Positions 20,285 through 56,000 are shown, counted from the stretch's first letter. The stretch is 64,000 nucleotides of DNA from Haliotis rubra (GCF_003918875.1 NW_025767489.1:434001-498000), one strand, 5' to 3'. Notes: generated by a model not told the origin, from the sequence alone. Numbers and translations: made by a program.

Positions 20285-20768
20285 TGTGTATGTGATTGTA
20301 CACATATCAGTGTACATGTGTAGGAGCATCTGAATGTGTGTGTAATTGGGCACATATCAGTGTAAACGTGTAGGAGCATCTGTATGTGTGTGTAATTGGG
20401 CACATATCAGTGTACATGTGTGTGAGGATCTATATGTGTGTATAATTGGGCACATATCAGTGTACATGTGTAGGAGCATCTGTATGTGTGTGTACTTGGG
20501 CACATATCAGTGTAAACGTGTAGGAGCATCTGTATGTGTGTGTAATTGGGCACATATCAGTGGACATGTGTAGGAGCATCTGAATGTGTGTGTAATTGGG
20601 CACATACCAGTGTACATGTGTAGGGGCATCTGTATGTGTGTGTAATTGGGCACATATCAGTGTACATGTGTAGGAGCATCTGAATGTGTGTGTAATTGGG
20701 CACATATCAGTGTACATGAGTAGGAACATCTGAATGTGTGTGTAATTGGGCACATACCAGTGTACATG
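20285..20768. repeat. 50-bp minisatellite, about 9.5 copies
   Basis: Unit TGTAATTGGGCACATATCAGTGTACATGTGTAGGAGCATCTGTATGTGTG. Confidence 0.92.
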
Positions 20769-22974
20769 AGCGGGTGCCAGTGTTTTTAAACATCAGCTCT
20801 GTCACACTCTGTTGCATATCTTCAAAACTATTTTTTCGTCAGACTTTGACCTCTTTGATTCCGGAGAGGGCTTCACAATCTTAACATGTAGTCCACAATA
20901 ACATATGGGTGTTTCTATATAATATACACCGGTAGTTGTATATATCATTGTATTCATTCACTTCTTCCTGGCGTGCCTGTCCGGAACATACCACCCGTTG
21001 CTTGCTGAAAACTTAAACTAAGAGCAAGTAACAGCATGAAGAAACCAATGATGCTGTACACCTTTTGCAGCATTTGACTGCGTAGATACCATCAGTATAT
21101 ATTCAGTTCGCCTGTACACGGATGCATTTCATGAGGCTGACAGGTGGTGGATGGTTTCTGGGTGTTCATGACCTGTTCATGACGTTTCAGTTCATTCAAA
21201 GGCAGCATCTGTTGTATTTCCTGTTTTACTTATCACCATTATTGCTTATTCAATATGCAAGAATGAAGAAGTAAAGCAAATCGATTCTCTCAAGGTCATA
21301 CATAAAAAAAGATCTATGCATACATGCAGTATTTCATTTTGTCACTGATGATGATCATGCCTGTTGTAGTGCTGAATATATATGAAGCAAAAAGTCACAT
21401 CTTTTGATGTACGGATTAGCCGACAAAACAATATTATTCACATTGTGTCTTCTCCTTACCACATTTTGCTATCAATACAATACAACGCGTTATTTACCTC
21501 TGAAACAACACACATGTGAATGTAATCGCGAAATGTGTTTAGGGTACGATACGGATTCATTTTTGACAATCCCACCACATTATCAAATACGTTTTTAGGA
21601 TTCTGTCTGACTAATCTCTCACAGACTCCCAACACATGCCGGCTGGGGCGTGCTGGGTAGTTTCATTGATCAATGGGTATTGGTCAGCAATATTTATGCA
21701 GCTTATTTCGTACTAATATATTATGGGTGATAATTACAGACGTATTACATGAGCGGTATGGCATCAGGCTGTGATGTATCGTTATGTTCTTACCTAACAA
21801 CACATATGCCTTTCTTATCAGGAAATAAGGGCAGGATATTGATTTATTTTTACATTTTTACCAATTCTAATATATTTAATAAAGTTTATGTTTCATACTG
21901 TCACGGCAAATTATTAACCGTAACAATACATTGCTTCAAAGAGATATCATTGCAATTTTTGTTATGATGCACATGATAACAGCAGTTGATATTCCACAGT
22001 AATATGTTTATTGTACTGTCTGTAATTGAGTGATATTTTACAAAGAAACGAGGTAAAATGTGCACCTTATTCATAAATTCTTATAAAGATTTTGATTCCA
22101 TTAATAGGTCAATATAATGGAGACTTTTAATAAAAAGCGATTGAACACATAATGGTTAAATGTCTCCAGCGCGTATATCAATAGTGTGTGTTTGTGTGAA
22201 AGTTCGGCCTCGGTGTTAGGCAAGGCAGTGTAATAAGTCATCTGTCTTTCGCAATGTTTATTAATGTATATCAGATTGAGTACTTGAATTCAGGTTCATC
22301 CAGATGTAACTTCAGAGACAGTCTTAAAAGGTGTATTGAAGTTTTAGAACAGTGGTGTAATGATTATTCCGTGACAGGAATGTTGGATAATGTGAAACTT
22401 GTTGGGTTTTTTATTGGTTTAAAAAGGTGGTACTCTTGTTAGACACGATACTAAATTTAACATTGAAATGTCTTCAAAACATCCTTCTGTTCTGGGAAAG
22501 CTAGCTATGTTTATCCTCCTTGGTAAGGAACTAATAGAGGTATCTTAAAATAACATATACAATGCACTCTGTCCAACTCGGACTCTGTCTTTCTCGGATT
22601 GCTGTATAAACCGGACTGAACTAACTGTCCCAACGTAATCCTTTTTTGTTGTCATAATGAAAAAGCTCTGTATCTCGAACTCTCATTATTTCGGATTTCG
22701 GACCAAAGTGTCGGCCCGAAAAGGTAGTTACACGTAGTTGCTTTATAATCCGGACTGAGCAGGAAGTCCGCTTGGCCAATAAACCTTGAATAAACAATCC
22801 GTTGATTGGTTTGTGTATTTTGTCTTATTTACTGAGCAGGAAGTCCGCTTGGCCAACAAACCTTAATAATACATTTGCTTCACGGGTATTCAGTGATTAC
22901 CTCCCTTTGTCGTTCAAAATTGCGTGAGAATGTCTGTGCATGATACAAATGACAGTCACTGTTACTCTGCGTAC

Positions 22975-23814: not shown

Positions 23815-24036
23815 ACACATGAAGATCCGGGTTAGAATTGGTATTCAGCAACACATGCTTGTCATAAAATGCGACTAACATTATCGGGTGGTCAGGCTCG
23901 CTGACTTAGTTGACATGAAATCGTATCCCAGTTGCGTAGATCGATGCTCATGCTGTTGATCCCTGGATTGTCTGATTATTTACAGACTGCCGCCATATAG
24001 CTGGAATATTGACAGCGGCGTAAAACAACACACAAA
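23815..24036 (+). mobile_element. SINE family 1 copy
   Basis: GAAGATCCGGGTTAGAATT...GGTCAGGCTCGCTGACTT...CCGCCATATAGCTGGAATATTG...GGCGTAAAACAAC; GAATATTT on both sides (probable TSD). Confidence 0.85.
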
Positions 24037-24239
24037 CAGAATATTTGAAAAGTGGGACCTTGTTTTTATTTCCCATTTCTGCTGACATAAAGCGACCCTA
24101 GTGCCTGTCTGTCTCCTCTGACACAACTCAGATCAACATTTATATCCACATAAGAACAAACATAACTGTAGTATGCCTCGTGTTAGGGGATAGTGATTTC
24201 GTGTTCAGTCTTGATTCAGTGCCAATAAATCACTGGGAA

Positions 24240-24987: not shown

Positions 24988-27720
<2,733 letters not shown>

Positions 27721-28871: not shown

Positions 28872-30375
28872 TTCTCATTTGCGCTTCACAAGATTTTAGT
28901 CAAAACAAAAGCCCGAAGATTGCGTTATTTTATGCTTTGTTGAAACCAGCTCTGTAAATATTATGTAGGACACCCTATTTCAAACTCAGCCTTGAGTAAC
29001 TTCATGCAAATTCAGTAGTGTCCCCTTTCCGACTCTATGCACTGAGTAAATTTACATCGATCACTTTCTGTAGAGATCAAGGCCCATAACTGTGTATGTT
29101 CAAGATCAAAAAGCATGTAGCAAGGGAAGTAAGTCTTGGAAAGATCATTGGTGGCGCCAGTTTCAGAAGTTTGTCTTCAGTGGTTGACATAAACATGCAC
29201 CTATCCACAGATTCGAATACTAAGCATGTTTGAAGACAAGCAGTAAGTTTGAAAAACTGTTCCGTTGTTGCAGTTCGGGGCCTAAAATCTGTTTGTTCGT
29301 CATATGCTGTGATATTCACCAATTCCTTTCAATGGAACCAAATTATTATTCGAAGATTCCAACATTTACTAAATATATTTGGGGATGCATTGTGATAAAT
29401 CCCTTGTGGTCTTGAGGCACGAGTGGGTATGTCATTAATGGGGTTTTATAACACCAAACAGTATTTATGTAACGGGGATGGCACTTGGTCCTAAAAACTT
29501 CGTTAAGGGGGGTCCGTTTTATTACTACACTGAAGTAATAGACTGTTTTACATGTTACTCAACTATTGGATAATTTGCTTCTAACTTGCGACATGTTATG
29601 AGGCATCAAAAACCATATTGGACCTGTAATTCACCAATTTAACACCATCCAGTCATGGCCTTTAAACCACCAGGCTGGGTTAAAGGCAGCCAGTGAGCAA
29701 GCTTCACACTTTCCTTATGCACCAGTCCTCAGCCAATGTAAACCAATGGTAAGACACTAGACCTGACCTCATTCAGATTTATCTACGTTGCATTGCAACT
29801 ACTTTTGATATATGACCCAGTCTTGGCTATATATGCATCGTATGAAGATATAAACCCTTTCATTGTATATATGTTTCAGGTTTTCTGAAATAATCACAAA
29901 CAATAATAATTAATACAAGACATATTCAAATAGTTTTCCCAAATCGATTTACAGTTGCTTTCATTATTCTGTACTTGATACATTTATGCAACATATTCGG
30001 GCTAAATTCATTCATGTGACATGCTACGCCTCACATAAACTGACATTATATTGCGGCACATTGACATCACTGATATAAATAAATCATTTCCTGATTTGTA
30101 CCAAAATTGTGCTCACTGTAGCCTCAGTTGCATCAGATTACACTGTTCACAGGATTCAAGAAAGAATGTCTACATTTTGTCACTTCGATAATAGAGCTGA
30201 CCTATTTAATACATCTAATAATCAGTGATAAGCTCATATCCCCCATTCGTGCAATACATCTGTTGTAATTGAAAGTTTATTTTTCTTCCCTTTACCTTCC
30301 TTTACGATCCGAATAACAACTAATATTGTCCATGACGGTGAATAAAGGTGTCACCATTGTATTCTAAGTCAGTCA

Positions 30376-32329
30376 CTAAAAACACTTTCTGTGAACAATG
30401 GATGGGCCAGACTCAGCATACTCCTGCTTGCTGATCCACATCTGCTGGAAGGTGGACAGAGAGGCAAGGATGGAGCCACCGATCCAGACGGAGTATTTCC
30501 TCTCTGGAGGAGCGATGACCTTGATCTTCATTGTGCTGGGAGCAAGGTCTGTGATCTCCTTCTGCATTCGGTCAGCGATACCTGAGCACAAGGTGCTACC
30601 TCCTGAGAGAACAGTGTTGGCATACAAGACCTTACGAATATCAACATCACACTTCATAATGGAGTTGAATGTTGTTTCGGGGATACCGGTTGATTCCATA
30701 CCCAAGAAGGATGGCTGGAAGAGGATCTCTGGACAACGGAACCTCTCGTTGCCAATAGTGATGACCTGACCGTCGGGAAGCTCGTAGCTCTTCTCCAGGG
30801 AGGAAGAAGTGGAAGCTGTAGCCATCTCCTGCTCGAAGTCGAGGGCGACATAGGCCAGCTTCTCCTTGATGTCCCTGACGATATTTCGCTCGGCGATGGT
30901 GAAGGAGTAACCGCGCTCTGTGAGAATCATCATCAAGTAATCAGTGAGATCGCTACCAGCAATGTCAAGTTCCATGGTGGCGTGTGGTAAGGCATATCCC
31001 TCATAGATGGGAACAGTGTGGGTGACACCATCACCAGAGTCCAAAACAATACCCGTCGCACGACCGGAAGCGTGCAGAGAAAGAACGGCCTGAATGGCCA
31101 CATACATAGCTGGAGAATTGAAGGCTTCGAACATGATCTGGGTCATTTTTTCACGGTTGGCCTTAGGGTTGAGAGGAGCCTCTGTCAGGAGAACGGGATG
31201 TTCCCCAGGATTCACTTCGAGCTTTTCGAATGTGTGATGCCAGATCTTCTCCATGTCGTCCCAGTTGGTTACAATACCGTGCGAGACAGGGTATGTGAAT
31301 TTGCGAGCATAGTGCCTTGAGCGAGCTTCGTCACCGACGTGGTAACTATTTCCCTGGAATAAATTGACATGACATATATACTCAGACTTAATTGAGACTG
31401 GACCGACAAGAAATAAAGTCACTAAAGATCACGATACAGGACATGGAACATGACTTGCTACCAAGTGAAATCTGAAATGCCATGCTAACATTATTACCTA
31501 CGCCCCTTCAAAGACGAATGCCATAAAACATGGCGTGTCAAAACCAAATATTCCTAATAATAACCTAATAATAAGGATGGTAATATTATACACAGAATTG
31601 AGAGTAAACATTGAGTATATGTAATAAGGATTCAAAATATCTAAGGAATGTACAAAATAATGAATGTTTGCTAATGCTGATGAGTACCTTGTCATCCTTG
31701 GTATCGAAATTTATGTTACAATAGAGATGATGGAAGAGAAGAGGAACACTTAATGGATAGACAACTCAAGTATTTGCGTGATAACTGTGTTGGAATCTAC
31801 ACCGAAACGTCGCACCTATTGCGATAAAGAAGTATCTATCCATAAAGTGTTCCTCTTCATCACAGTAGGTCCTAAATGGCACTTAAGAAAAACAATTATA
31901 CGGATGAAATGACGGGGGGGGGGGGGGGATTTCTTTCTGTAATAGAATTCAGTATATATACTAAAGGATATCCCGAACCTGTGTTATGTGAGAATCATTG
32001 TTCCGGTCCTATATATATGTTTGATTATCTTATTTATGAATTATTTAGTAACATAATTACGATGATTTAAGATCCTCGGACATCTCTGGATCATTCATTC
32101 ATTCATTCATATGACAGTACGACTTTACTCGGAACCCTACCGTCCGTATGAACGAGGTTTTCCTCCAGTGAACAGTCAAAGAACCTTAACAAACATCAAT
32201 TACCTGGCGGGGGCTGCGACCGACGATGGAGGGGAAGACAGCTCTTGGGGCGTCGTCACCGGCGAACCCAGCCTTACACATGCCGGAGCCGTTGTCGATA
32301 ACCAGGGCGGCAACACCTTCGTCGCACAT
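30376..32329 (-). CDS. act: Actin F, divergent D-loop-deleted actin, 367 aa, exons 32204-32329 and 30376-31353
   Basis: [12 protein letters not shown]...GRSPRQ|GTAATT; acceptor TTATTCCAG|GGAAAT at 31354/31353; open frame with three in-frame deletions (7+1+1 codons); ends HRKCF-TAG; AATAAA (minus) at 30276-30281. Confidence 0.85.
31735..31862. mobile_element. Penelope-like terminal-repeat remnant with inverted flanks, in the actin F intron
   Basis: AAGAGGAACACTTAATGGATAGA and TCTATCCATAAAGTGTTCCTCTT inverted arms enclose TGC-GTGATAA-CTGTGT..ACAC-CGAAACGTC-GCA, a degenerate minimal hammerhead layout. Confidence 0.45.
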
Positions 32330-32901
32330 TTTGGCTGAGAGTAATAAGACGTGTTCACTACTGTGAGGAATGTGTTAACCTTGACAGGCGGGTTTGGATA
32401 CCAAAGTGGTAAATGTATCACTTTACAGGGAATGCAGACACTAAAGGACGGCTACACATACATTCACAGGCTTTGGTGGGGTATACAATTAGGCTCTCTC
32501 GGGGAACGTCTAGTGTTGCGGGAAACACACGCATGTTTCCTTAGGAAAATTGAAGACACGTCTACATGTCCACAATATCAGGGCGTCGCCCACAACAACC
32601 TTTCATAATATGACTATTTAAGGCAGCATTGGGCTCAAACATTTACCCAACTTATACAAAATATCAATATAAAGTATTATATCCCTTTGAGATTAACACT
32701 GTTAGGGTGCTATTGATATACAGTATGACCAGAAATTATTGAGAATTTTAGGAATATGTTTAATTCAATTTCTAGTATAAAAAACCTTGACCAGCTATCA
32801 AGTGCTTGGTTTCATTCCGTTAATGTTTTTTCATTAGTTTGTAAAGAGTTATTCCCCTGTGTTTACTTGCTATCAGACGACATTTTCAGTGATCCTCAGT
32901 A

Positions 32902-34187
32902 TGGATGATTTCGAGAAGAGGAAGTTGATTTTAGAGTATAATAACAAGGACATAAGATCAGCTTAAGTGATTTCAAGTAGAACAGGCATCCCTTTTGTCC
33001 ACTGTTTATCGTGTTTTGAAAAATATTGCAAATGGATATGGCATTGAGAACCAGGGAGGCGCAGGTAGGCCCAGAAAATTGACTGTCGGTGACAGGAGGC
33101 GGCTTGGTATTCTTGTTTCTGAAAACAAACGAAGTAGTTTATACTCCTAGGCCAAATTTAGAGATAACATCATTATCAGGTAATATGATACACCAGGCCT
33201 TATCACCCATACTGCATATCCTGATCATGTTGAAGATCAGTGCTTGTCATCGTCCCCTGCGGTTAATACTCATGAAGTTGTTCTATGAACATGTGGACAC
33301 TGTTTCAACAGCGGGGTAAACCTTGTTTGTTTTAGTAAATCTCTGGAGGTGGGAGTTGTCATACCAATTACTGGATAACGCTTTTACTACTGCTGAGAGA
33401 TCCTAAAAGATAGGGACTTTTCTAACATTTGGCCTAGGACTGTTTAGAAAACTTAAGGCTGGATATGATTGATAGAGGAACTGTGGCTGTCTGTAAGGAG
33501 ACAATTAGAACTGAGCTGCATGCAATGGTTTGGCAGAAAAGTCGAGGAATTCCATCACCAATCATGAAACCTGAACAAAAGGAGCGAAGGTTGAACTGGT
33601 GCTTACAGCATAGAAATTTTAACTGGGACAATGTGATTTTCTCAGATGAAAGTTCTGTATGGCTGTTTCCTAATACACTGAAATCCTGGACCAAACAAAC
33701 TGAAAAACCTTTGTATCAGCGCCCAAAGTATAGTCCTAAATTTAACGGGTGGGGTGGCATATCTGTGTTAGGGGCAACGCCCCTCTGTGTATTTGAAGGG
33801 AATATGAACAGTGAGCGGTACACAGATATTCTCGAGGGACATTTACTTCCATCTGATCACCAGTTCTATGGACATTTGTGGATTTTCCAGCAGGGCAACG
33901 ACCCAAAACATCGTTCAAAGCATTCACAGGCCTGGTTTCGGACCCAAAATATGACATTATTAGATTGGCCAAGGTATATCCCTGACCTAAATCCAATAGA
34001 AAATGTTTGGGAACTTATGAAGGAAAATGTCAATAAGAAAAATCTGACAAATATTGCTGAAATGAAAGAAGAGGTGGTCCGATATTGGGACAGCATGGAC
34101 CACGACTTTCTAACTTCTTTGATCAGTAGTATGCCCCGCCGCATTGAAGCCTGCATTGCTGCCTATGGTGACTTGACAAAATGCTAA
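32902..34187 (+). pseudogene. Disrupted Tc1 transposase
   Basis: The N-terminal region has a stop, a frameshift and a 301-bp insertion; the 240-aa ORF 33465-34187 covers the catalytic domain, but the second Asp is mutated (FQQGNDPKH versus the FQQDNDPKH consensus). Confidence 0.85.
33142..33442. mobile_element. Non-autonomous TIR element nested in the Tc1 transposase gene
   Basis: TIRs TCCTAGGCCAAAT(T/GT)TAGA; TTTA duplicated at 33138-33141 and 33443-33446; removing it restores the frame ..KRSSLENLRLDMIDRG.. Confidence 0.8.
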
Positions 34188-37950: not shown

Positions 37951-40243
<2,293 letters not shown>

Positions 40244-40384: not shown

Positions 40385-40574
40385 CAATATTATGCTACAT
40401 ATTGTGGAACGTGACAATAGCTGCACAAGTCTTCCGGGTATGGGGCAAGGGTGGGGAAACAAGAAAGAAGAGGGTCTCGTCTCAGTGATATCATGGTTCG
40501 ATACAGGAGGGATGTTGCAGTGTCGGGAACGCAACTCATGATGTTGTGGTTGCATTACATTGTCTCTGTTAACG

Positions 40575-40808
40575 TTGGTTTGTAGTTTAACGCCGTACTC
40601 AGCAATATTCCAAATACGAGTATATGGCTGCCGTCTGGAACGAATGGAGTCTGGACCAGACAATCCAGTGATCGACAGCATTACCATCCATCTACGCATT
40701 TGGGATACGATGACATGTGTCAACCAAGTCAGCGAACTTGACCACCCGATCCCGTTAGTCGCAAGCACGGTTTGAGGAAAACCGATTCTAACTGGGCTTC
40801 TTCATGGG
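40575..40808 (-). mobile_element. SINE family 1 copy
   Basis: GTTTAACGCCGTACTCAGCAATATTCC...CAACCAAGTCAGCGAACTTGACCACCCGATCCCGTTAGTCGC...TTCATGGG. Confidence 0.85.
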
Positions 40809-44629: not shown

Positions 44630-47600
44630 TTGCACTCACTCCAACAACATCCTGCAACTCCAATAAAATCTTGCACTGACTCCCCTAACATCTTGCACTA
44701 ACTACCTTCACATCTTGCACTAACTCCCTTCACATCTTGCATTAACTCCCTTTTCATCTTGCACTAACTCCGACAACATCTTGCACTCCCTCACATCTTG
44801 CACAAACTCCCTACACATCCTGCACTAACTCCGACAACATCTTGCACTAACTTTAACAACATCTTGCACTAACTCCCTTAACATCTTGCCCTAACTCCCA
44901 TATCATCTTGCAGTAACTCCTTCACATCTTGCACTAACTCCCTTCACAACTTGAAGTAACTCCTTCACATCTTGCACGGACTCCGACAACATATTGCACT
45001 CACTCCAACAACATCCTGCAACTCCCATAAAATCTTGCAGTAACTCCCATATCATCTTGCACTGACTCCTTTAACATCTTGCAGTAACTCCTTCACATCT
45101 TGCAGTAACTCCTTTAACATCTTGCACTAACTCCCCTAACATCTTGCAGTAACTACCTTCACATCTTGCACTGACTCCTTTAACATCTTGCACTAACTCC
45201 CTTCACATCTTGCACTGACTCCCTTCACATCTTGCAGTAACTCCCTTAACATCTTGCACTGACTCCCCTAACATCTTGCACTAACTCCCTTCACATCTTG
45301 CACTGACTCCTTTAACATCTTGCAGTAACTCCTTCACATCTTGCACTGACTCCCCTAACATCTTGCACTAACTCCCTTCACATCTTGCACTGACTCCTTT
45401 AACATCTTGCACTAACTCCCTTCACATCTTGCAGTAACTCCTTTAACATCTTGCACTAACTCCCCTAACATCTTGCACTTACTACCTTCACATCTTGCAC
45501 TGACTCCTTTAACATCTTGCACTCAACTCCCTTCACATCTTGCACTGACTCCTTTAACATCTTGCACTAACTCCCTTCACATCTTGCACTAACTCCCTTC
45601 ACATCTTGCAGTAACTCCCTTAACATCTTGCACTGACTCCCCTAACATCTTGCATTAACTCCCTTCTCATCTTGCACTAACTCCTTCACATTTTGCTCTA
45701 ACTCCTTCACGTCCTGCAACTAACTCCTTCACGTCCTGCACTAACTCCGACAACATCTTGCACTAACTTTAACAACATCTTGCACTAACTCCCTTAACAT
45801 CTTGCCCTAACTCCCATATCATCAGTAACTCCTTCACATCTTGCACTAACTCCCTTCACAACTTGAAGTAACTCCTTCACATCTTGCACGGACTCCGACA
45901 ACATATTGCACTCACTCCAACAACATCCTGCAACTCCCATAAAATCTTGCAGTAACTCCCATATCATCTTGCACTGACTCCTTTAACATCTTGCAGTAAC
46001 TCCTTCACATCTTGCAGTAACTCCTTTAACATCTTGCACTAACTCCCCTAACATCTTGCAGTAACTACCTTCACATCTTGCACTGACTCCTTTAACATCT
46101 TGCACTAACTCCCCCTTCACATCTTGCACTGACTCCCTTCACATCTTGCAGTAACTCCCTTAACATCTTGCACTGACTCCCCTAACATCCTGCACTAACT
46201 CCCTTCACATCTTGCACTGACTCCTTTAACATCTTGCAGTAACTCCTTCACATCTTGCACTGACTCCCCTAACATCTTGCACTAACTCCCTTCACATCTT
46301 GCACTGACTCCTTTAACATCTTGCACTAACTCCCTTCACATCTTGCAGTAACTCCTTTAACATCTTGCACTAACTCCCTAACATCTTGCACTTACTACCT
46401 TCACATCTTGCACTGACTCCTTTAACATCTTGCACTAACTCCCTTCACATCTTGCACTGACTCCTTTAACATCTTGCATTAACTCCCTTCTCATCTTGCA
46501 CTAACTCCTTCACATTTTGCTCTAACTCCTTCACGTCCTGCAACTAACTCCTTCACGTCCTGCAACTAACTCCTTCACGTCCTGCACTAACTCCTTCACA
46601 TCTTGCACTAACTCCTTTACATCTTGCATTAACTCCATTCACGTCTTGCTGTAACTCCTTCACATCTTGCACTAACTCCTTCACATTTTGCTCTAACTCC
46701 TTCACGTCCTGCAACTAACTCCTTCACGTCCTGCACTAACTCCTTCACGTCCTGCACTCAACTCCTTCACATCTTGCACCAACTCCCTTTTACATCTTGC
46801 ATTAACCCATTCATGTCTTGCTGTAACTCTCTTCACATCTTGCACTAACTCCCTTCACATTTTGCAGTAACTCCTTCACGTCCTGCACTCAACTCCTTTC
46901 ACGTCCTGCACTAACTCCTTCACGTCCTGCACTAACTCCTTCACGTCCTGCAATGAACTCCTTCACATCTTGCACTAACTCCTTTTTACATCTTGCAGTA
47001 ACTCCTTCACATCTTGCACTGACTCCTTTAACATCTTGCACTAACTCCCTTCACATCTTGCACTAACTCCCTTCACATCTTGCAGTAACTCCCTTAACAT
47101 CTTGCACTGACTCCCCTAACATCTTGCACTAACTACCTTCACATCTTGCACTAACTCCCTTCACATCTTGCATTAACTCCCTTCTCATCTTGCACTCCAA
47201 CTCCTTCACATTTTGCTCTAACTCCTTCACGTCCTGCAACTAATTCTTCACGTCCTGCACTAACTCCTTCACGTCCTGCACCCAACTCCTTTCAACATCT
47301 TGCACTAACTCCTTTACATCTTGCATTAACTCCATTCACGTCTTGCTGTAACTCCCTTCACATCTTGCACTAACTCCTTCACATTTTGTTTCTAACTCCT
47401 TCACGTCCTGCAACTAACTCCTTCACGTCCTGCACTAACTCCTCACGTCCTGCACCAACTCCTTCACATCTTGCACTCAACTCCTTTTACATCTTGCATT
47501 AACTCCATTCATGTCTTGCTGTAACTCCTCTTCACATCTTGCACCAACTCTTCACATTTTGCAGTAACTCCTTCACGTCCTGCACTAACTCCTTCACGTC

Positions 47601-50600
47601 CTGCACTAACTCCTTCACGTCCTGCACTAACTCCTTCACGTCCTGCACTAACTCCTCTCACATCTTGCACTAACTCCTTTACATCTTGCAGCAACTCCTT
47701 CACATCTTGCAGTAACTCCTTCACATCTTGCACTGACTCCTTTTACGTCTTGCACTAACTCCTTCACGTCTTGCACTCACTCACATCTTGCACTGTCTCC
47801 TTCACATCTTGCATTGACTCTTTCACATCTTGCACAACTCCTTCACATGTTGCACTGACTCGTCACATCTTGCCTCACCTGACAACATCTTGCAACTCCC
47901 ATAACATCTTGCTCTCACTCACATCTTGCACTGTCTCCCTTCACATCTTCCAGTAACTCCTTCACGTCCTGCACTCAACTCCTTTCACGTCCTGCACCAA
48001 CCCTTCACATCTTGCACTAACTCCCTTTACATATCTTGCAGTAACTCCTTCACATCTTGCAGTAACTGCTTCACATCTTGCACTGACTCCTTTACGTCTT
48101 GCACTAACTCCTTCACGTCTTGCACTCACTCACATCTTGCACTGTCTCCTTCACATCTTGCATTGACTCTTTCACATCTTGCACTAACTCCTTCACATGT
48201 TGCACTGACTCGTTCACATCTTGCCTCACTCCGACAACATCTTGCAACTCCCATAACATCTTGCTCTCACTCACATCTTGCACTGTCTCCTTCACATCTT
48301 CCAGTAACTCCTTCACATCTTGCACTAACTCCGACAACATCTTGCACTCCCTCACATCTTGCACAAACTCCCTACACATCCTGCACTAACTCCGACAACA
48401 TCTTGCACTAACTTTAACAACATCTTGCACTAACTCCCTTAACATCTTGCCCTAACTCCCATATCATCTTGCAGTAACTCCTTCACATCTTGCACTAACT
48501 CCCTTCACAACTTGAAGTAACTCCTTCACATCTTGCACGGACTCCGACAACATATTGCACTCACTCCAACAACATCCTGCAACTCCTATAAAATCTTTGC
48601 AGTAACTCCCATATCATCTTGCACTGACTCCCTTTAACATCTTGCAGTAACTCCTTCACATCTTGCAGTAACTCCTTTAACATCTTGCACTAACTCCCCT
48701 AACATCTTTGCAGTAACTACCTTCACATCTTGCACTGACTCTCCTTTAACATCTTGCACTAACTCCCTTCACATCTTGCACTGACTCTTCACATCTTGCA
48801 GTAACTCCCTTTAACATCTTGCACTGACTCCTAACATCTTGCACTAACTCCTCTCACATCTTGCACTGACTCCTTTAACATCTTGCAGTAACTCCTTCAC
48901 ATCTTGCACTGACTCTCTAACATCTTGCACTAACTCCCTTCACATCTTGCACTGACTCTCTTTTAACATCTTGCACTAACTCCCTTCACATCTTGCAGTA
49001 ACTCCTTTAACATCTTGCACTAACTCCCCTAACATCTTGCACTTACTACCTTCACATCTTGCACTGACTCCTTTAACATCTTGCACTAACTCCCTTCACA
49101 TCTTGCACTGACTCCTTTAACATCTTGCACTAACTCCCTTCACATCTTGCACTAACTCCCTTCACATCTTGCAGTAACTCCCTTAACATCTTGCACTGAC
49201 TCCCCTAACATCTTGCATTAACTCCCTTCTCATCTTGCACTAACTCCTTCACATTTTGCTCTAACTCCTTCACGTCCTGCAACTAACTCCTTCACGTCCT
49301 GCACTAACTCCGACAACATCTTGCACTAACTTTAACAACATCTTGCACTAACTCCCTTAACATCTTGCCCTAACTCCCATATCATCAGTAACTCCTTCAC
49401 ATCTTGCACTAACTCCTTCACAACTTGAAGTAACTCTTCACATCTTGCACGGACTCCGACAACATATTGCACTCACTCCAACAACATCCTGCAACTCCCA
49501 TAAAATCTTGTAACTCCCATATCATCTTGCACTGACTCCTTTAACATCTTGCAGTAACTCCTTCACATCTTGCAGTAACTCCTTTAACATCTTGCACTAA
49601 CTCCCTAACATCTTGCAGTAACTACCTTCACATCTTGCACTGACTCCTTTAACATCTTGCACTAACTCCCTTCACATCTTGCACTGACTCTCTTCACATC
49701 TTGCAGTAACTCCTTTAACATCTTGCACTGACTCTAACATCCTGCACTAACTCCCTTCACATCTTGCACTGACTCCTTTTAACATCTTGCAGTAACTCCT
49801 TCACATCTTGCACTGACTCCCCTAACATCTTGCACTAACTCCCTTCACATCTTGCACTGACTCCTTTAACATCTTGCACTAACTCCCTTCACATCTTGCA
49901 GTAACTCCTTTTAACATCTTGCACTAACTCCCCTAACATCTTGCACTCCCTTACTACCTTCTCACATCTTGCACTGACTCCTTTAACATCTTGCACTAAC
50001 TAACTCCTTCACATCTTGCACTGACTCCTTTAACATCTTGCATTAACTCCCTTCTCATCTTGCACTAACTCCTTCACATTTTGCTCTAACTCCTTCACGT
50101 CCTGCAACTAACTCCTTCACGTCCTGCAACTAACTCCTTCACGTCCTGCACTAACTCCTTCACATCTTGCACTAACTCCTTTACATCTTGCATTAACTCC
50201 ATTCACGTCTTGCTGTAACTCCTTCACATCTTGCACTAACTCCTTCACATTTTGCTCTAACTCCTTCACGTCCTGCAACTAACTCCTTCACGTCCTGCAC
50301 TAACTCCTTCACGTCCTGCACTAACTCCTTCACATCTTGCACTAACTCCTTTACATCTTGCATTAACTCCATTCATGTCTTGCTGTAACTCCTTCACATC
50401 TTGCACTAACTCCTTCACATTTTGCAGTAACTCCTTCACGTCCTGCACTAACTCCTTCACGTCCTGCACTAACTCCTTCACGTCCTGCACTAACTCCTTC
50501 ACGTCCTGCACGAACTCCTTCACATCTTGCACTAACTCCTTTACATCTTGCAGTAACTCCTTCACATCTTGCACTGACTCCTTTAACATCTTGCACTAAC

Positions 50601-52096
50601 TCCCTTCACATCTTGCACTAACTCCCTTCACATCTTGCAGTAACTCCCTTAACATCTTGCACTGACTCCCCTAACATCTTGCACTAACTACCTTCACATC
50701 TTGCACTAACTCCCTTCACATCTTGCATTAACTCCCTTCTCATCTTGCACTAACTCCTTCACATTTTGCTCTAACTCCTTCACGTCCTGCAACTAATTCC
50801 TTCACGTCCTGCACTAACTCCTTCACGTCCTGCACTAACTCCTTCACATCTTGCACTAACTCCTTTACATCTTGCATTAACTCCATTCACGTCTTGCTGT
50901 AACTCCTTCACATCTTGCACTAACTCCTTCACATTTTGCTCTAACTCCTTCACGTCCTGCAACTAACTCCTTCACGTCCTGCACTAACTCCTTCACGTCC
51001 TGCACTAACTCCTTCACATCTTGCACTAACTCCTTTACATCTTGCATTAACTCCATTCATGTCTTGCTGTAACTCCTTCACATCTTGCACTAACTCCTTC
51101 ACATTTTGCAGTAACTCCTTCACGTCCTGCACTAACTCCTTCACGTCCTGCACTAACTCCTTCACGTCCTGCACTAACTCCTTCACGTCCTGCACTAACT
51201 CCTTCACATCTTGCACTAACTCCTTTACATCTTGCAGTAACTCCTTCACATCTTGCAGTAACTCCTTCACATCTTGCACTGACTCCTTTACGTCTTGCAC
51301 TAACTCCTTCACGTCTTGCACTCACTCACATCTTGCACTGTCTCCTTCACATCTTGCATTGACTCTTTCACATCTTGCACTAACTCCTTCACATGTTGCA
51401 CTGACTCGTTCACATCTTGCCTCACTCCGACAACATCTTGCAACTCCCATAACATCTTGCTCTCACTCACATCTTGCACTGTCTCCTTCACATCTTCCAG
51501 TAACTCCTTCACGTCCTGCACTAACTCCTTCACGTCCTGCACTAACTCCTTCACATCTTGCACTAACTCCTTTACATCTTGCAGTAACTCCTTCACATCT
51601 TGCAGTAACTGCTTCACATCTTGCACTGACTCCTTTACGTCTTGCACTAACTCCTTCACGTCTTGCACTCACTCACATCTTGCACTGTCTCCTTCACATC
51701 TTGCATTGACTCTTTCACATCTTGCACTAACTCCTTCACATGTTGCACTGACTCGTTCACATCTTGCCTCACTCCGACAACATCTTGCAACTCCCATAAC
51801 ATCTTGCTCTCACTCACATCTTGCACTGTCTCCTTCACATCTTCCAGTAACTCCTTCACATCTTGCACTCACTCCGACAACATCTTGCACTCACTCCGAC
51901 AACATCTTGCAACTCCCATAACATCTTGCTCTAACTCCCTTAACATCTTGCACTAACTCCAATATCATCGTGCCCTCACTCCCTTAACATATTGCACTTA
52001 CTCCCATATCATCTTTCACTGACTCCTTTAACATCTTGGACTAACTCCCTTCACATCTTGCACTAACTCCTTCACATGTTGCTCTAACTCCTTCAA
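44630..52096. repeat. About 7.5-kb satellite of a 21-22-bp monomer with higher-order structure
   Basis: Monomer CATCTTGCACTAACTCC(C)TTCA; a variant block at about 44761 recurs at about 48322 (about 3.56-kb period), with a sub-period of about 0.92 kb (44825 versus 45741). Confidence 0.95.
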
Positions 52097-52100
52097 TAAT

Positions 52101-53092
<992 letters not shown>

Positions 53093-56000
53093 TAGACATT
53101 AACATTAAAGAATCACTATTAATCACCTAAAGGCCAAAGTGTATAATTGTCCTTCTCATCGTCAGAAATGTGTTGTGACTGAAATTACAAAATACATAAT
53201 GATTGCTTCAGTTATCCTGATTATGTTCGTCGAGCGTTTGTGTATTTATTCCAATGTTGTTTTCTTCATTTGGCATTGATACATTTTCTTTGCTTATTTA
53301 TTATATATTACATATCTTACGTCAATTCTACTATTGTCTACTTGGAATAGTTACAAAGAACGTGCGTTGTTTTGTGCGTTGTGCATGCTGTATGTTTCAT
53401 GCAATCGTCAGTATATACAGAGTTGTACCACAAACTACAGTTACACAAGCTGAAAACGACATATCCCGTGTGAGTAATTGCACCGTTTTACATGCAAGCA
53501 ACACAACGTTTCTTAGTTAGTTGTTATTTATGTTGCACAATTATACAAACACGTAACTTAAGGGGAGCTTTGATTGCATTCAACTCTAAAAAAATTATTT
53601 TCACATTTGGCAGTGTATGTCTATTGTAAGACTGGTAAATATTCTAGTCCTGCTTGACAGAGACATTGTGTCAAAGTGGGTACTTGTTTTCTAAATAAAA
53701 CATTCCTTATCAGAAAATATCCACCTAAACTTGTTTCTATTTCATATTCGAAAGAAATAACACGATGAACATAGAGAAATGTTGTGGGGTTTTCACTTTA
53801 TATACACAGCATTAAACAATCTGTTTACTGATACGTGAATGTAAAGTTAATGCGCTCATATATGAACCCCCAATTTTACAGACGGAAATACGGTTGTCGG
53901 TTATTATTCTAACTGGTGAAATAGTTCCTTTTTCTCGGTGATGATGATTCTGTACATGAGATTACCATGTCAGGGAACCAAAGGGACAACAAGCCTGACC
54001 ACCCGATCCTATTACGTGGACTTGTGCGAAGAGAATAAATTGAACCTGGGCCTCGTTCTACAAAGCGATTGTAGTGCAACGACTGTCGTAAGTCTATGTT
54101 AAAGTATAGGAGTTACGGTCGTCTTAGGGTTACGATCGCTTTGAAGAAAGGGGCCCAGTTCTCATTTGCGCTTCACAAGATTTTAGTCAAATCAAAAGCC
54201 CGAAGATTGATTTTTGTATGCTTTGTTGAAACCAGCTCTGTAAATATTATGTAGGGCACCCTATTTCAAATTCAGCCTTGAGTAACTTTATGCAAATTCA
54301 GTTGTGTCTGAAAATACAGGTCCCTTTTCCGACTCTATGCACCTAGTAAAATTACATCGATGACTTTCTGTAGAGATCAATGCCCATAACTGTGTATGTT
54401 CCAAGATAAAAAAAGCATGTAGCAAGGGAAGTAAGTCTTGGAAAGATCATTGGTGGCGGCATTTTCAGAGGTTTGGTTGACATAAACATGTACCTATCCA
54501 CAGATTCGAATACTAAGCATGTTTGAAGACAAGCAGTAACTTTGAAAAACTGTTCCGTTGTTGCAGTTCGGGGCTTAAAATCTGTTCGTCATATGCTGTG
54601 ATATAGACCAATTCCTTTCAATGGAACCAAATTATTATTCGAAGATTCCTACATTTCCAAAATATATTTGGGGACGCATTGTGATAAATTCCTTGTGGTG
54701 TTGAGGCACGAGTGGGTATGTCATTAATGGTTTTTTTATAACACCAAACAGTATTTATGTAACGGGGATGGCACTTGGTCCTAAAAACTTCGTTAAGGGG
54801 GGTGCCGTTTTATTACCACACGGAAGTAATAGACTGCTTTACATGCTACTCAACTATTGGATAATTTGCTTCTAACTTGCGACATGTTATGAGGTATCAA
54901 AAAACCAAATTGCACCTGTAATTCACCAATTTAACACCTTCCAGTCATGGCCTTTAAACCACCAGGCTGGGTGAAAGGCAGCCAGTGAGCAAGCTTCACA
55001 CTTTCCTTATGCACCAATCCTCAGCCAATGTAAGCCAATGGTAAGACAATAGACCTGACCTCATTCAGATTTGGCTACTTTGCATAGCAACTACTTTTGA
55101 TATATGACCCGGTCTTGGCAATATATGCATCGTATGAAGATATAAACCCTTTCATTGACAATTGTATATATGTTTGAGGTTTTCTGAAATAATCACAAAC
55201 AATAAATATTGTTGCAAGCAACGATGAGGGCTCCTTGGCTTGGACAATTTCTAGCCATTTGGTACCTGTCATGCAGATGTCGAAAGCAGTAAAGGCTATA
55301 GCTGATATGGATCATATCACTGTCAGTAATGAGAAATACTTCAGTACTAAACTTTGAATTCTTATGTTTGAGGGTTAGATACAAAGGATTGTGTTGTATG
55401 GTATGGGTAATTGCACATATGGTTTTGGAAACAGCTGTTGGCTTGATTAGAAATTCGAAGAAAAAGAATAATGCACGTTCAATTGCTAATAATTTATTTC
55501 TTTTACTGAATTGATGACATCCTCACCAGTTCTGACAAATTGATGGTGCTGTCTGAAAACATTTTAACTGGAATTACTGGACGTTCTATAAAATTAGATA
55601 ATTTGTTTGCAAAGCTTGAATTGCATTCCTGGATCTGGATTTAAGAATATCATTTGTTGTCTCAGATTTGACAGCTCCTCGTCATTGTCAATTACATCTA
55701 GCGTTGAAATTCACATCGTCTCCCATATCTGCACGTGGACCACGCTTTGCAGTGGTAGTCTCTTTATAGGAGATATTTGTTCTCCCGCGTGAGCGCTCAT
55801 CTGATTGTGAACTACGTGAGGGAAGTTGATCTGTATCATAAATTGTAAATGTGTAATGTGACTAACAAATTGCCTGCTTTTAAATTTAGTGCTATGACTT
55901 TTAGTGTTTTTAAATGACAATGTAATGAATACATGTATATGTTTTTGAAATAAAACTCATTTTGACTCTGTACTTACAATGTCTATTAATGCAGACTTGT

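What the first reader, a model, noticed from the sequence alone, without database searches (positions are those of the whole stretch)
30376..32329. Actin F: intact-frame actin with subdomain 2 rebuilt and the D-loop deleted
Seen: RPRHQ|[33 protein letters not shown] becomes RSPRQ|[26 protein letters not shown]. All three deletions (7, 1 and 1 codons) preserve frame, and both splice sites and a poly(A) signal remain. ATPase-core residues (D11, S14, K18, Q137, D154, D157, H161, K213, E214, G301-G302) are retained, although 305-307 near the adenine pocket changes to LCS. By contrast, the true pseudogenes D and H carry frameshifts or a stop. F shares the E-type 5' UTR and MATASTSSS segment and lies tail-to-tail with E, so it looks like a diverged E duplicate. 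Inference: a young actin-related protein under selection rather than decay. M44/M47 (MICAL targets) are gone and the context around methylated H73 is changed.
Basis: partly seen in the sequence, partly recalled or inferred. Interest (0 to 1): 0.82.

Follow-up and report, generated by a model that had tools for sequence, protein, structure and literature searches.

The report
Divergent abalone actin copy lacking D-loop
One of eight tandem actin gene copies in this abalone window keeps an open reading frame but has lost the filament-contact loop, many invariant actin residues and its core promoter motifs, so it is either a lineage-specific non-polymerising actin-like gene or a copy on its way to becoming a pseudogene; the sequence alone cannot say which.

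Summary
Actin F (minus strand: exon 1 32329-32204, intron 850 nt, exon 2 31353-30376) encodes an intact 367-aa actin. It has a net 7-codon D-loop deletion, two 1-codon deletions, 49 substitutions against E, GT/AG splice sites and an AATAAA.

- For selection: all indels keep the frame, whereas 4 of 30 local non-coding indels are multiples of 3. There is no stop (P about 0.07-0.11 under neutral simulation). omega_F is 0.25 overall and 0.16 outside subdomain 2, and omega=1 is rejected. Neighbours D and H broke after far fewer changes.
- Against: F is not young, because its intron and flanks no longer align to any copy. Its coding sequence is a gene-conversion mosaic. 13 of 49 changes hit residues invariant in 22 diverse actins, close to random, unlike G or H. 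rufescens P0085 (4 of 40 each). The TATA and CArG boxes of the E-type promoter are destroyed only in F. The rebuilt blocks evolve at omega about 0.6, not different from 1.
- No protein with F's rebuilt segment turned up in two word searches.

Verdict: a relaxed old E-type duplicate in a birth-and-death array. Its frame was probably kept by selection while it was remodelled; its present function is doubtful.

The parts
32204..32329 (-). F exon 1 coding part: ATG to Q42, 42 codons. The last 15 nt (32218-32204) read R-S-P-R-Q instead of R-P-R-H-Q.
   Evidence: The nucleotide alignment suggests +AGC and -CAT rather than 7 substitutions.
31354..32203 (-). F intron, 850 nt, GTAATT...TTCCAG. It aligns to no other copy's intron and holds no D-loop micro-exon relic.
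30376..31353 (-). F exon 2: 325 codons plus stop TAG at 30378-30376. It begins GGA AAT AGT TAC CAC, directly after the site of the net 7-codon D-loop deletion.
   Evidence: Residues 43-330 score 319.8 bits against Pfam Actin.
31282..31323 (-). Scrambled patch R53-S66 of F (actin residues 59-72): [14 protein letters not shown] becomes [14 protein letters not shown].
   Evidence: 18 of 30 nt are mismatched in codons 60-69. omega is about 0.6 for the blocks.
31204..31227 (-). Second rebuilt patch with a 1-codon deletion: YNELRVAPE becomes -EKLEVNPG (actin residues 91-99).
30897..30905 (-). 1-codon deletion in the ACC ACC ACT (TTT) triplet run plus T203I. The run is prone to slippage.
30583..30591 (-). 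L-C-S in place of M-F/Y-P (actin residues 305-307, beside the adenine pocket).
30276..30281 (-). AATAAA, about 95 nt downstream of the stop.
   Evidence: read directly from the sequence.
32393..32400 (-). Degenerate TATA box: TATCCAAA where E has TATATAAA and the H. rufescens copies have TATAAAAA.
32421..32430 (-). Degenerate CArG (SRF) box: CCCTGTAAAG where H. rufescens has CCATATAAGG and E has CCATATCAGG.
32330..32580 (-). E-type proximal promoter and 5' UTR of F. It is 56% identical to E and 66-70% identical to the H. rufescens copies.
24988..27720 (+). Actin E, the intact paralog nearest to F and a partial conversion partner. It lies tail to tail with F.

Best explanation
F is an old tandem duplicate of the E-type cytoplasmic actin gene. 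It sits in a birth-and-death actin array of an abalone; other agents' notes name the species as Haliotis rubra, which I did not verify.

F has escaped conventional-actin constraint. Its pointed-end face was remodelled: the D-loop, residues 59-72, 91-99 and 201-207. Residues of the cleft and of inter-subunit contacts were replaced: Y143H, T148A, R177E, R183S, H275P, D292V. The two phosphate-binding loops and most of the core stay actin-like.

The remodelling happened through several indels that all kept the reading frame. This is best explained by selection on the downstream protein at that time (inferred). The 3' two-thirds of the coding sequence has also been overwritten repeatedly by gene conversion from intact copies (shown), which helps keep the frame open.

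Today the gene lacks the TATA and CArG boxes that every other copy keeps (shown). Its youngest substitutions look nearly neutral (weak evidence). So I read it as a relaxed, probably dying or marginally functional actin-like copy, not as a proven new actin-related protein.

If it is translated, the product should bind nucleotide poorly to normally. It should be unable to insert a D-loop into a neighbouring subunit, so it could not elongate filaments at barbed ends (inferred from established actin structure knowledge).
For: - Intact 367-aa ORF with in-frame indels.
- Local non-coding indels are multiples of 3 in only 4 of 30 cases.
- P(no stop | 40-57 non-synonymous hits) is 0.07-0.20 in neutral simulation.
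- D and H broke after about 5-12 amino-acid changes.
- ML branch model: omega_F is 0.246 for the whole coding sequence and omega=1 is rejected at p=1e-10. Outside codons 36-101, omega_F is 0.16 against 0.05 for A/B/C/E and 0.27 for G/R1/R2.
- The rebuilt blocks have omega_F 0.61, not different from 1.
- 33 of 57 F-unique non-synonymous changes fall in 10.6% of the codons (p=4e-18). The N:S ratio differs between the blocks and the rest (Fisher p=0.0016).
- Conversion mosaic: a 115-nt exact tract with E and a 71-nt exact tract with A/C, and E-type and ABC-type informative sites alternate.
- TATA and CArG are lost only in F.
- 13 of 49 changes fall at sites invariant in 22 diverse actins, against 4 of 40 for G and for P0085.
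- Intron and flanks are unalignable.
- No protein has more than 76% (or 71%) identity in the rebuilt segment.
Against: - A TATA-less promoter can still drive low or tissue-specific transcription.
- F's promoter is no more diverged from the H. rufescens promoters than E's is.
- omega below 1 in the remainder persists after adding six more possible donor copies: 19 N against 25 S, p=1e-4. This fits continuing purifying selection as well as it fits patching.
- The frame-preservation statistic (roughly 0.001-0.01 under pure neutrality, by my own combination) says nothing about when selection stopped, or whether it has.
- The recent-tract count is tiny.
Confidence: 0.5

Rival explanations
1. F is a currently functional, lineage-specific actin-like protein. 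It keeps the actin fold and phosphate loops but cannot polymerise normally. For example, it might dock with its largely intact barbed-end face onto a filament pointed end or onto actin-binding partners and block further growth. Or it might act as a monomeric actin-like subunit, possibly with germline-restricted expression like other young actin-like genes.
For: - The frame is kept through at least 3, and probably 5-6, indel events, and there is no stop.
- omega=1 is rejected for the whole gene and for the part outside subdomain 2.
- Non-synonymous changes are concentrated on the pointed-end face and on known inter-subunit contacts, while P-loops 11-18 and 154-161 are untouched.
- An island V54-A58 and the stretch 74-90 carry only synonymous changes, although the scrambled patches lie on both sides of them.
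- The promoter region is still 66-70% identical to the H. rufescens promoters.
- The neighbours G and P0085 show that divergent yet constrained actins exist in these arrays.
- Precedent: actin-derived, testis-biased D-ActL paralogs in Drosophila (PMC7038667).
Against: - Loss of the TATA and CArG boxes.
- Near-random hits on invariant residues, including L65R, H275P, D292V and residue 306 to C at the adenine pocket.
- omega about 0.6-1 in the rebuilt blocks.
- Conversion patching can mimic constraint.
- No ortholog or annotated protein was found, although H. rubra, H. rufescens and H. cracherodii RefSeq actins are in the database searched.
Confidence: 0.35
2. F has been a plain unprocessed pseudogene since soon after duplication. 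The open frame is luck, helped by repair through gene conversion from intact neighbours. The rebuilt segment is simply the part that is too diverged and indel-ridden to be converted any more.
For: - Rebuilt blocks show N:S of 33:9, close to the neutral 3.4:1, and omega not different from 1.
- Mosaic conversion tracts.
- Promoter motifs lost.
- Substitutions nearly random with respect to invariant sites.
- A 268-codon open but heavily mutated actin fragment in H. rufescens (L001 21945-22751) shows that decaying copies can stay open.
- Actin codon periodicity and the ACC ACC ACT repeat favour indels in multiples of 3.
Against: - All indels inside the unconverted, neutral-looking region keep the frame, where local non-coding indels do so in 13% of cases.
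- No stop: P about 0.07-0.11.
- Perfectly conserved islands sit between the scrambled patches.
- D and H were disabled much sooner.
Confidence: 0.12
3. The rebuilt 5' part of exon 2 was copied by gene conversion from a different, already divergent actin paralog elsewhere in the genome. The scan notes another intact actin with a D-loop 6 residues shorter. On this reading F is a chimera, not a locally evolved variant.
For: - F is demonstrably a conversion mosaic.
- Other notes on the same genome (s1-325446, s1-320435) describe further short-D-loop actin paralogs.
- An unrelated metagenome actin, P0030, shares the N-x-Y-H motif.
Against: - No protein in the 5.8-billion-sequence collection, which includes Haliotis RefSeq sets, exceeds 76% identity over the rebuilt segment.
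- Adding four copies from a second H. rubra cluster explained only 16 of 89 F-unique states, almost none of them in the blocks.
- P0030 is otherwise 68% identical and, once its acceptor is placed, has a full-length D-loop.
Confidence: 0.03

Closest known systems
Lineage-specific actin-like paralogs derived from actin duplicates (Drosophila obscura-group D-ActL1-3; mammalian germline actin-like proteins such as ACTL8)
   Same: - It arose by duplication of a conventional actin.
- It has a long branch with raised omega.
- The nucleotide-binding motifs are largely kept while the surfaces change.
- Some members of that class pseudogenise in some species (PMC7038667; bioRxiv 10.64898/2026.08.21.746286).
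   Different: - Those genes are shown to be expressed (male germline) and retained across species. F has no expression data here and no ortholog was found.
- F is a DNA-level tandem copy that still exchanges sequence with its parents by gene conversion.
- F has lost its core promoter motifs.
Conventional cytoplasmic actins of Haliotis (window copies A, B, C, E; H. rufescens and H. rubra RefSeq actins)
   Same: - Same two-coding-exon structure, with the intron after Q41.
- 86% amino-acid identity.
- Pfam Actin match at 320 bits over residues 43-330.
- E-type promoter backbone, and 5' and 3' UTR starts.
   Different: - The D-loop is deleted and subdomain 2 rebuilt.
- 13 residues invariant across eukaryotic actins are changed.
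- omega is 3-5 times higher.
- TATA and CArG are lost.
Unprocessed actin pseudogenes of the same array (D, H)
   Same: - Same array.
- Relaxed constraint.
- H is also E-type, with MATASTSSS.
   Different: D and H carry frameshifts or a stop and lack exon 1 after few amino-acid changes. F has about five times more amino-acid changes and no disabling lesion.
Relaxed but constrained divergent actins G (window) and P0085, 'actin-2-like', of H. rufescens
   Same: - About 10% diverged and intact.
- Small in-frame deletions in P0085 (D-loop minus 1, near residue 91 minus 1).
- The changed positions overlap with F's (14 observed against 5.2 expected, p=1e-4).
   Different: - G and P0085 avoid invariant sites (4 of 40 each); F does not (13 of 49).
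- P0085 is not F's ortholog: the H. rufescens copies form their own clade.

Membership tests
Actin superfamily fold (Pfam PF00022) | Significant match to the Actin profile over most of its length | tested here: met
   319.8 bits, E=2.7e-95 for F residues 43-330. The equivalent part of E scores 349 bits.
Conventional filament-forming actin | DNase-I-binding loop (residues 40-50) present | tested here: not met
   net 7-residue deletion; no relic or micro-exon in the intron.
Conventional filament-forming actin | Residues invariant across eukaryotic actins are retained | tested here: not met
   13 invariant sites are changed (Q59R, R62H, L65R, L67F, I71V, E99G, T126A, Y143H, R177E, L180I, R183S, H275P, D292V).
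Conventional filament-forming actin | Phosphate-binding loops and catalytic residues (D11, S14, K18, Q137, D154, D157, H161) present | tested here: met
   alignment. The adenine-pocket residues 305-307 are changed to LCS.
Conventional filament-forming actin | Strong purifying selection (omega about 0.05 in this array) | tested here: not met
   omega_F is 0.16-0.25, and 0.61 in the rebuilt blocks.
Ancient Arp subfamilies (Arp1-Arp10) | Orthology to a conserved Arp clade rather than to actin | tested here: not met
   F nests inside the Haliotis actins as sister to E/H. Identity to E is 86.6%.
Lineage-specific functional actin-like gene | Transcribed and correctly spliced | not testable with these tools
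RNA rows hold 0.17 or less of the sampled words, and 27% of F's 31-mers are shared with paralogs, so there is no F-specific signal.
Lineage-specific functional actin-like gene | Retained with an open frame in related species | tested here: inconclusive
   no protein of 60-569 aa has more than 76% identity in the rebuilt segment, although Haliotis RefSeq actins are in the collection. Unannotated loci and fused models over 569 aa were not searched.
Unprocessed pseudogene | Disabling lesion (stop, frameshift, lost start or lost splice site) | tested here: not met
   ATG, GT/AG and the stop are at their ancestral places, and there is no internal stop.
Unprocessed pseudogene | Loss of promoter elements kept by the functional copies | tested here: met
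   TATA and CArG are degenerate in F only.
Unprocessed pseudogene | Neutral substitution pattern (omega = 1) across the gene | tested here: not met
   omega=1 is rejected for the whole gene and outside codons 36-101. It is not rejected in blocks 38-73 plus 91-100.

The most novel reading that the evidence does not exclude
F is an expressed, selected actin-like protein whose pointed-end face has been deliberately ablated. The D-loop is gone, and the contacts at 61-65 and 201-207 are changed. Its barbed-end face and phosphate loops survive. Such a protein could act as a genetically encoded pointed-end terminator or monomer-like decoy, made from actin itself. It may belong to a wider abalone set of short-D-loop actins: two more are noted elsewhere in this genome, and P0085 and G show parallel changes.
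Probability: 0.15. Interest if true: 0.65.

Novelty: new member of a known kind. Interest (0 to 1): 0.35.

Why it matters
Actin is among the most constrained eukaryotic proteins. An intact paralog that has shed the D-loop and many invariant residues is a natural experiment on which parts of actin matter once polymerisation is no longer required. If it is expressed, it would add a mollusc example to the short list of young actin-derived proteins known from flies and mammals.

If it is not expressed, it is a useful caution. In tandem arrays, gene conversion and past selection can keep a dying copy open for a long time, so an intact frame alone should not be read as function.

Tried and rejected
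Local scripts for alignment, codon counting and k-mer overlap did still use the whole coding sequence.

2. The RNA shares are uninformative, because 27% of F's 31-mers occur in the paralogs.

3. P0085 (H. rufescens) as F's ortholog: rejected by the tree. The shared changed positions are parallel, not inherited.

4. P0030, with the same N-x-Y-H motif: it has a full-length D-loop once the acceptor is placed and is 68% identical overall. I treat this as coincidence.

5. A micro-exon restoring the D-loop: none by sequence.

6. Compensated frameshift (-1, -1, +2) in codons 60-67: it lowers the mismatches only from 18/30 to 11/28, so it is not convincing.

7. An exact-protein look-up of the neighbouring transposase ORF, to reach the source annotation: not on record.

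8. A search with G, to see whether this window's proteins are in the collection: inconclusive because of the 90% clustering.

9. Absence of transcript-derived fragments in the protein collection is not evidence. Even the DNA runs that hold F's words contributed no fragments.

10. Structure prediction was not run.

Full report
**What is there.** The window carries eight actin copies:
- A: 2715-1026, minus strand.
- B: 10514-8855, minus strand.
- C: 15425-13755, minus strand.
- D: exon 2 only, from 18774, minus strand.
- E: 24988-27720, plus strand.
- F: 32329-30376, minus strand.
- G: 40243-37951, minus strand.
- H: exon 2 only, about 52103-53085, plus strand.

The intact copies have one intron after Q41. 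F's model is exon 1 at 32329-32204, an 850-nt GT..AG intron, and exon 2 at 31353-30376. It is 1104 nt and 367 aa with no internal stop. D has a 23-nt frameshifting deletion. H has a stop and a +1 insertion, and neither has an exon 1.

**Nucleotide-level anatomy.** A nucleotide alignment suggests more events than three deletions. The end of exon 1 is better explained by +AGC and -CAT than by 7 substitutions in 12 nt. The D-loop change fits -24/+3 (an inserted CAC giving Y-H-V) as well as it fits -21. Codons 59-69 are nearly randomised, with 18 of 30 nt different. Yet they are flanked by an island (V54-A58, 16 of 17 nt identical) and by residues 74-90, which carry only synonymous changes. The intron holds no trace of the lost D-loop codons.

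**Age and origin.** F groups with E and H (bootstrap 89 on exon 2, 98 on the full coding sequence). It shares MATASTSSS and 33 nt of 5' UTR with E, and its upstream 250 nt are recognisably the E-type promoter. But F is not young:
- Its intron and flanks align to no other copy (33-47% identity).
- F-E dS is 0.34, the same as E-A.
- Its branch is 15 times longer than E's.
- Its promoter is 56% identical to E's and 66-70% identical to those of two H. rufescens copies.

The H. rufescens copies in L001 form their own clade. So P0085, which shares several changed positions with F (14 observed against 5.2 expected, p=1e-4), is a parallel case and not an ortholog.

**Evidence for selection.**
- Pairwise dN/dS between F and E is 0.24.
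- My ML branch model gives omega_F = 0.246 for the whole coding sequence. omega=1 is rejected at p=1e-10 and equality with the background at p=0.004.
- Outside codons 36-101, omega_F is 0.16. That compares with 0.05 for A/B/C/E and 0.27 for G and the two H. rufescens copies, and omega=1 is rejected at p=9e-11.
- Non-synonymous F-unique changes are extremely clustered: 33 of 57 fall in 10.6% of the codons (p=4e-18). The N:S ratio differs between the rebuilt blocks (33:9) and the rest (24:28), Fisher p=0.0016. Uniform whole-gene decay does not predict that.
- Neutral simulation from the inferred ancestor gives P(no stop) of 0.07-0.11 for 57 non-synonymous hits.
- Among 30 indels between the non-coding parts of A, B and C, only 4 are multiples of three. 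All of F's indels (at least 3, probably 5-6) keep the frame.
- D and H were disabled after only about 5-12 amino-acid changes.

By my own combination of these figures, pure neutrality since duplication has a likelihood of roughly 0.001-0.01. That rises to a few percent after allowing for the handful of copies inspected and for mutational bias toward 3n indels in codon-periodic or triplet-repeat sequence (ACC ACC ACT at the T202 deletion).

**Evidence for decay.**
1. In the rebuilt blocks (codons 38-73 and 91-100), omega_F is 0.61 and not different from 1 (p=0.43).
2. F's substitutions fall on residues invariant in 22 diverse eukaryotic actins almost at the background rate: 13 of 49, or 27% against 37%, P=0.07. 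G and P0085 avoid such sites strongly (4 of 40 each, P=6e-5), and A, B and C have none. The hits include L65R, R177E, R183S, H275P, D292V and Y143H, plus a Cys at residue 306 of the adenine pocket.
3. The coding sequence is a conversion mosaic. There is a 115-nt exact tract with E (codons 325-363), a 71-nt exact tract with A/C (codons 237-260), and alternating runs of E-type and ABC-type informative sites. Patching from intact donors can hold a frame open and can lower the apparent omega. A second H. rubra actin cluster (L003) shows that unsampled donors exist, though adding six more copies explained only 16 of 89 F-unique states and left 19 N against 25 S outside the blocks.
4. In the tracts that look most recently converted, I count about 6 non-synonymous and 4 synonymous differences from the nearest copy (from the table). 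One of them, Y279F, is also present in the L003 copies. That ratio is close to what neutrality on the F side would give, but the numbers are tiny.
5. The E-type promoter's TATA box (TATATAAA in E, TATAAAAA in H. rufescens) reads TATCCAAA in F (32400-32393). The CArG box (CCATATAAGG) reads CCCTGTAAAG (32430-32421). No other TATA or CArG match occurs within 700 nt upstream. A, B and G keep a perfect CArG, and E and both H. rufescens copies keep near-consensus CArG boxes and a TATA box; only C, like F, showed no exact match in the pattern scan.

**Orthologs and expression.** Two word-index searches aimed at the rebuilt segment found nothing above 76% or 71% identity. They covered candidate lengths of 179-569 aa and 60-192 aa. 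Conventional actins reach about 75% there. RefSeq actins of H. rubra, H. rufescens and H. cracherodii are in that collection. So F is not annotated as a stand-alone protein there, and no annotated ortholog exists. Fused models over 569 aa and unannotated loci were not covered.

The run search found DNA holders (two organism codes, share 0.24-0.42) and RNA rows at 0.17 or less.

**Reading.** The data fit best a copy that left conventional-actin constraint long ago. Its pointed-end face was remodelled while the frame still mattered. It is now kept partly by conversion, has lost its core promoter motifs, and accumulates changes almost freely.

Whether it is still a working gene cannot be decided here. 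My odds are:
- about 0.5 for a relaxed, dying or marginal copy;
- 0.35 for a currently functional actin-like gene;
- 0.12 for a pseudogene from the start;
- 0.03 for a chimera with an unseen divergent donor.

If it is translated, the protein lacks the loop that inserts into the next subunit's cleft and has altered contacts at 61-65 and 201-207. On established actin structure, it should not elongate filaments at barbed ends. A pointed-end-blocking or monomeric role is possible but speculative.

**Comparison and novelty.** F is a member of the actin fold family (320 bits). It is not a conventional actin by four tested features, and it is not one of the ancient Arps, because it nests inside the Haliotis actins. 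The nearest known kind is the lineage-specific actin-derived paralogs described in Drosophila and mammals (PMC7038667, PMC8291977), some of which also pseudogenise. Mollusc actin families are already known to evolve by within-lineage duplication or homogenisation (PMC5440852). I therefore class F as a new member of a known kind, of moderate interest.

Noticed in passing
window 44668-52095: A 22-nt satellite (consensus ATCTTGCACTAACTCCTTCAC) in about 347 copies abuts the truncated start of pseudogene H. Homologous arrays lie just 5' of actin copies in H. rufescens (L001 7254-9321 and 17134-18711).
   Followed up: partly
window 33465-34187 (+): A 240-aa ORF between F and G matches DDE_3 and HTH_Tnp_Tc3_2, so it is a Tc1/mariner-type transposase. 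Its exact product is not on record in the contig collection.
   Followed up: partly
window 29300-29919 and 54589-55218: A 630-nt repeat at 93% identity, in the same orientation, lies downstream of F and downstream of H. It is probably a mobile element.
   Followed up: no
window 37951-40243 (G); L001 10001-14445 (P0085): G and the H. rufescens 'actin-2-like' P0085 are each about 10% diverged yet strongly avoid residues invariant across eukaryotic actins (4 of 40 changes each). That suggests they are constrained divergent actins, unlike F. F and P0085 change the same positions far more often than chance (14 against 5.2 expected) without being orthologs.
   Followed up: partly
L001 21945-22751: H. 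rufescens carries a 268-codon actin fragment that is still open despite dozens of amino-acid changes and a 1-residue deletion. It lies next to a rearranged partial copy (20465-21032). Decaying actin copies in these arrays can stay open for a long time.
   Followed up: no
L002 486-560 (ENA ERZ27247895 contig k141_333014; protein P0030): A divergent metagenome actin has ...NDYHIGDEA..., with the same K50N, S52Y and Y53H states as F. It has a full-length but rewritten D-loop if the acceptor at 484-485 is used.
   Followed up: partly
L003 (H. rubra QXJH01000648.1:386206-415065); proteins P0248-P0258, P0262, P0265: Actin-domain proteins of about 534 aa are conserved in Haliotis, Crassostrea, Mya, Ylistrum, Aplysia and Biomphalaria. 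In H. rubra they lie in a second actin cluster whose actin exons are about 92% identical to the window copies. The extra roughly 160 residues were not examined.
   Followed up: no
window 31917-31930: A run of about 14 G (plus strand) sits inside F's intron.
   Followed up: no
window 23855-24037, 25202-25391, 40574-40762; L001 2988-3174 and others: An element of about 190 nt recurs upstream of E, inside E's intron and upstream of G. It also occurs several times in the H. rufescens cluster at 80-87% identity. It is either a short mobile element or a conserved regulatory block.
   Followed up: no
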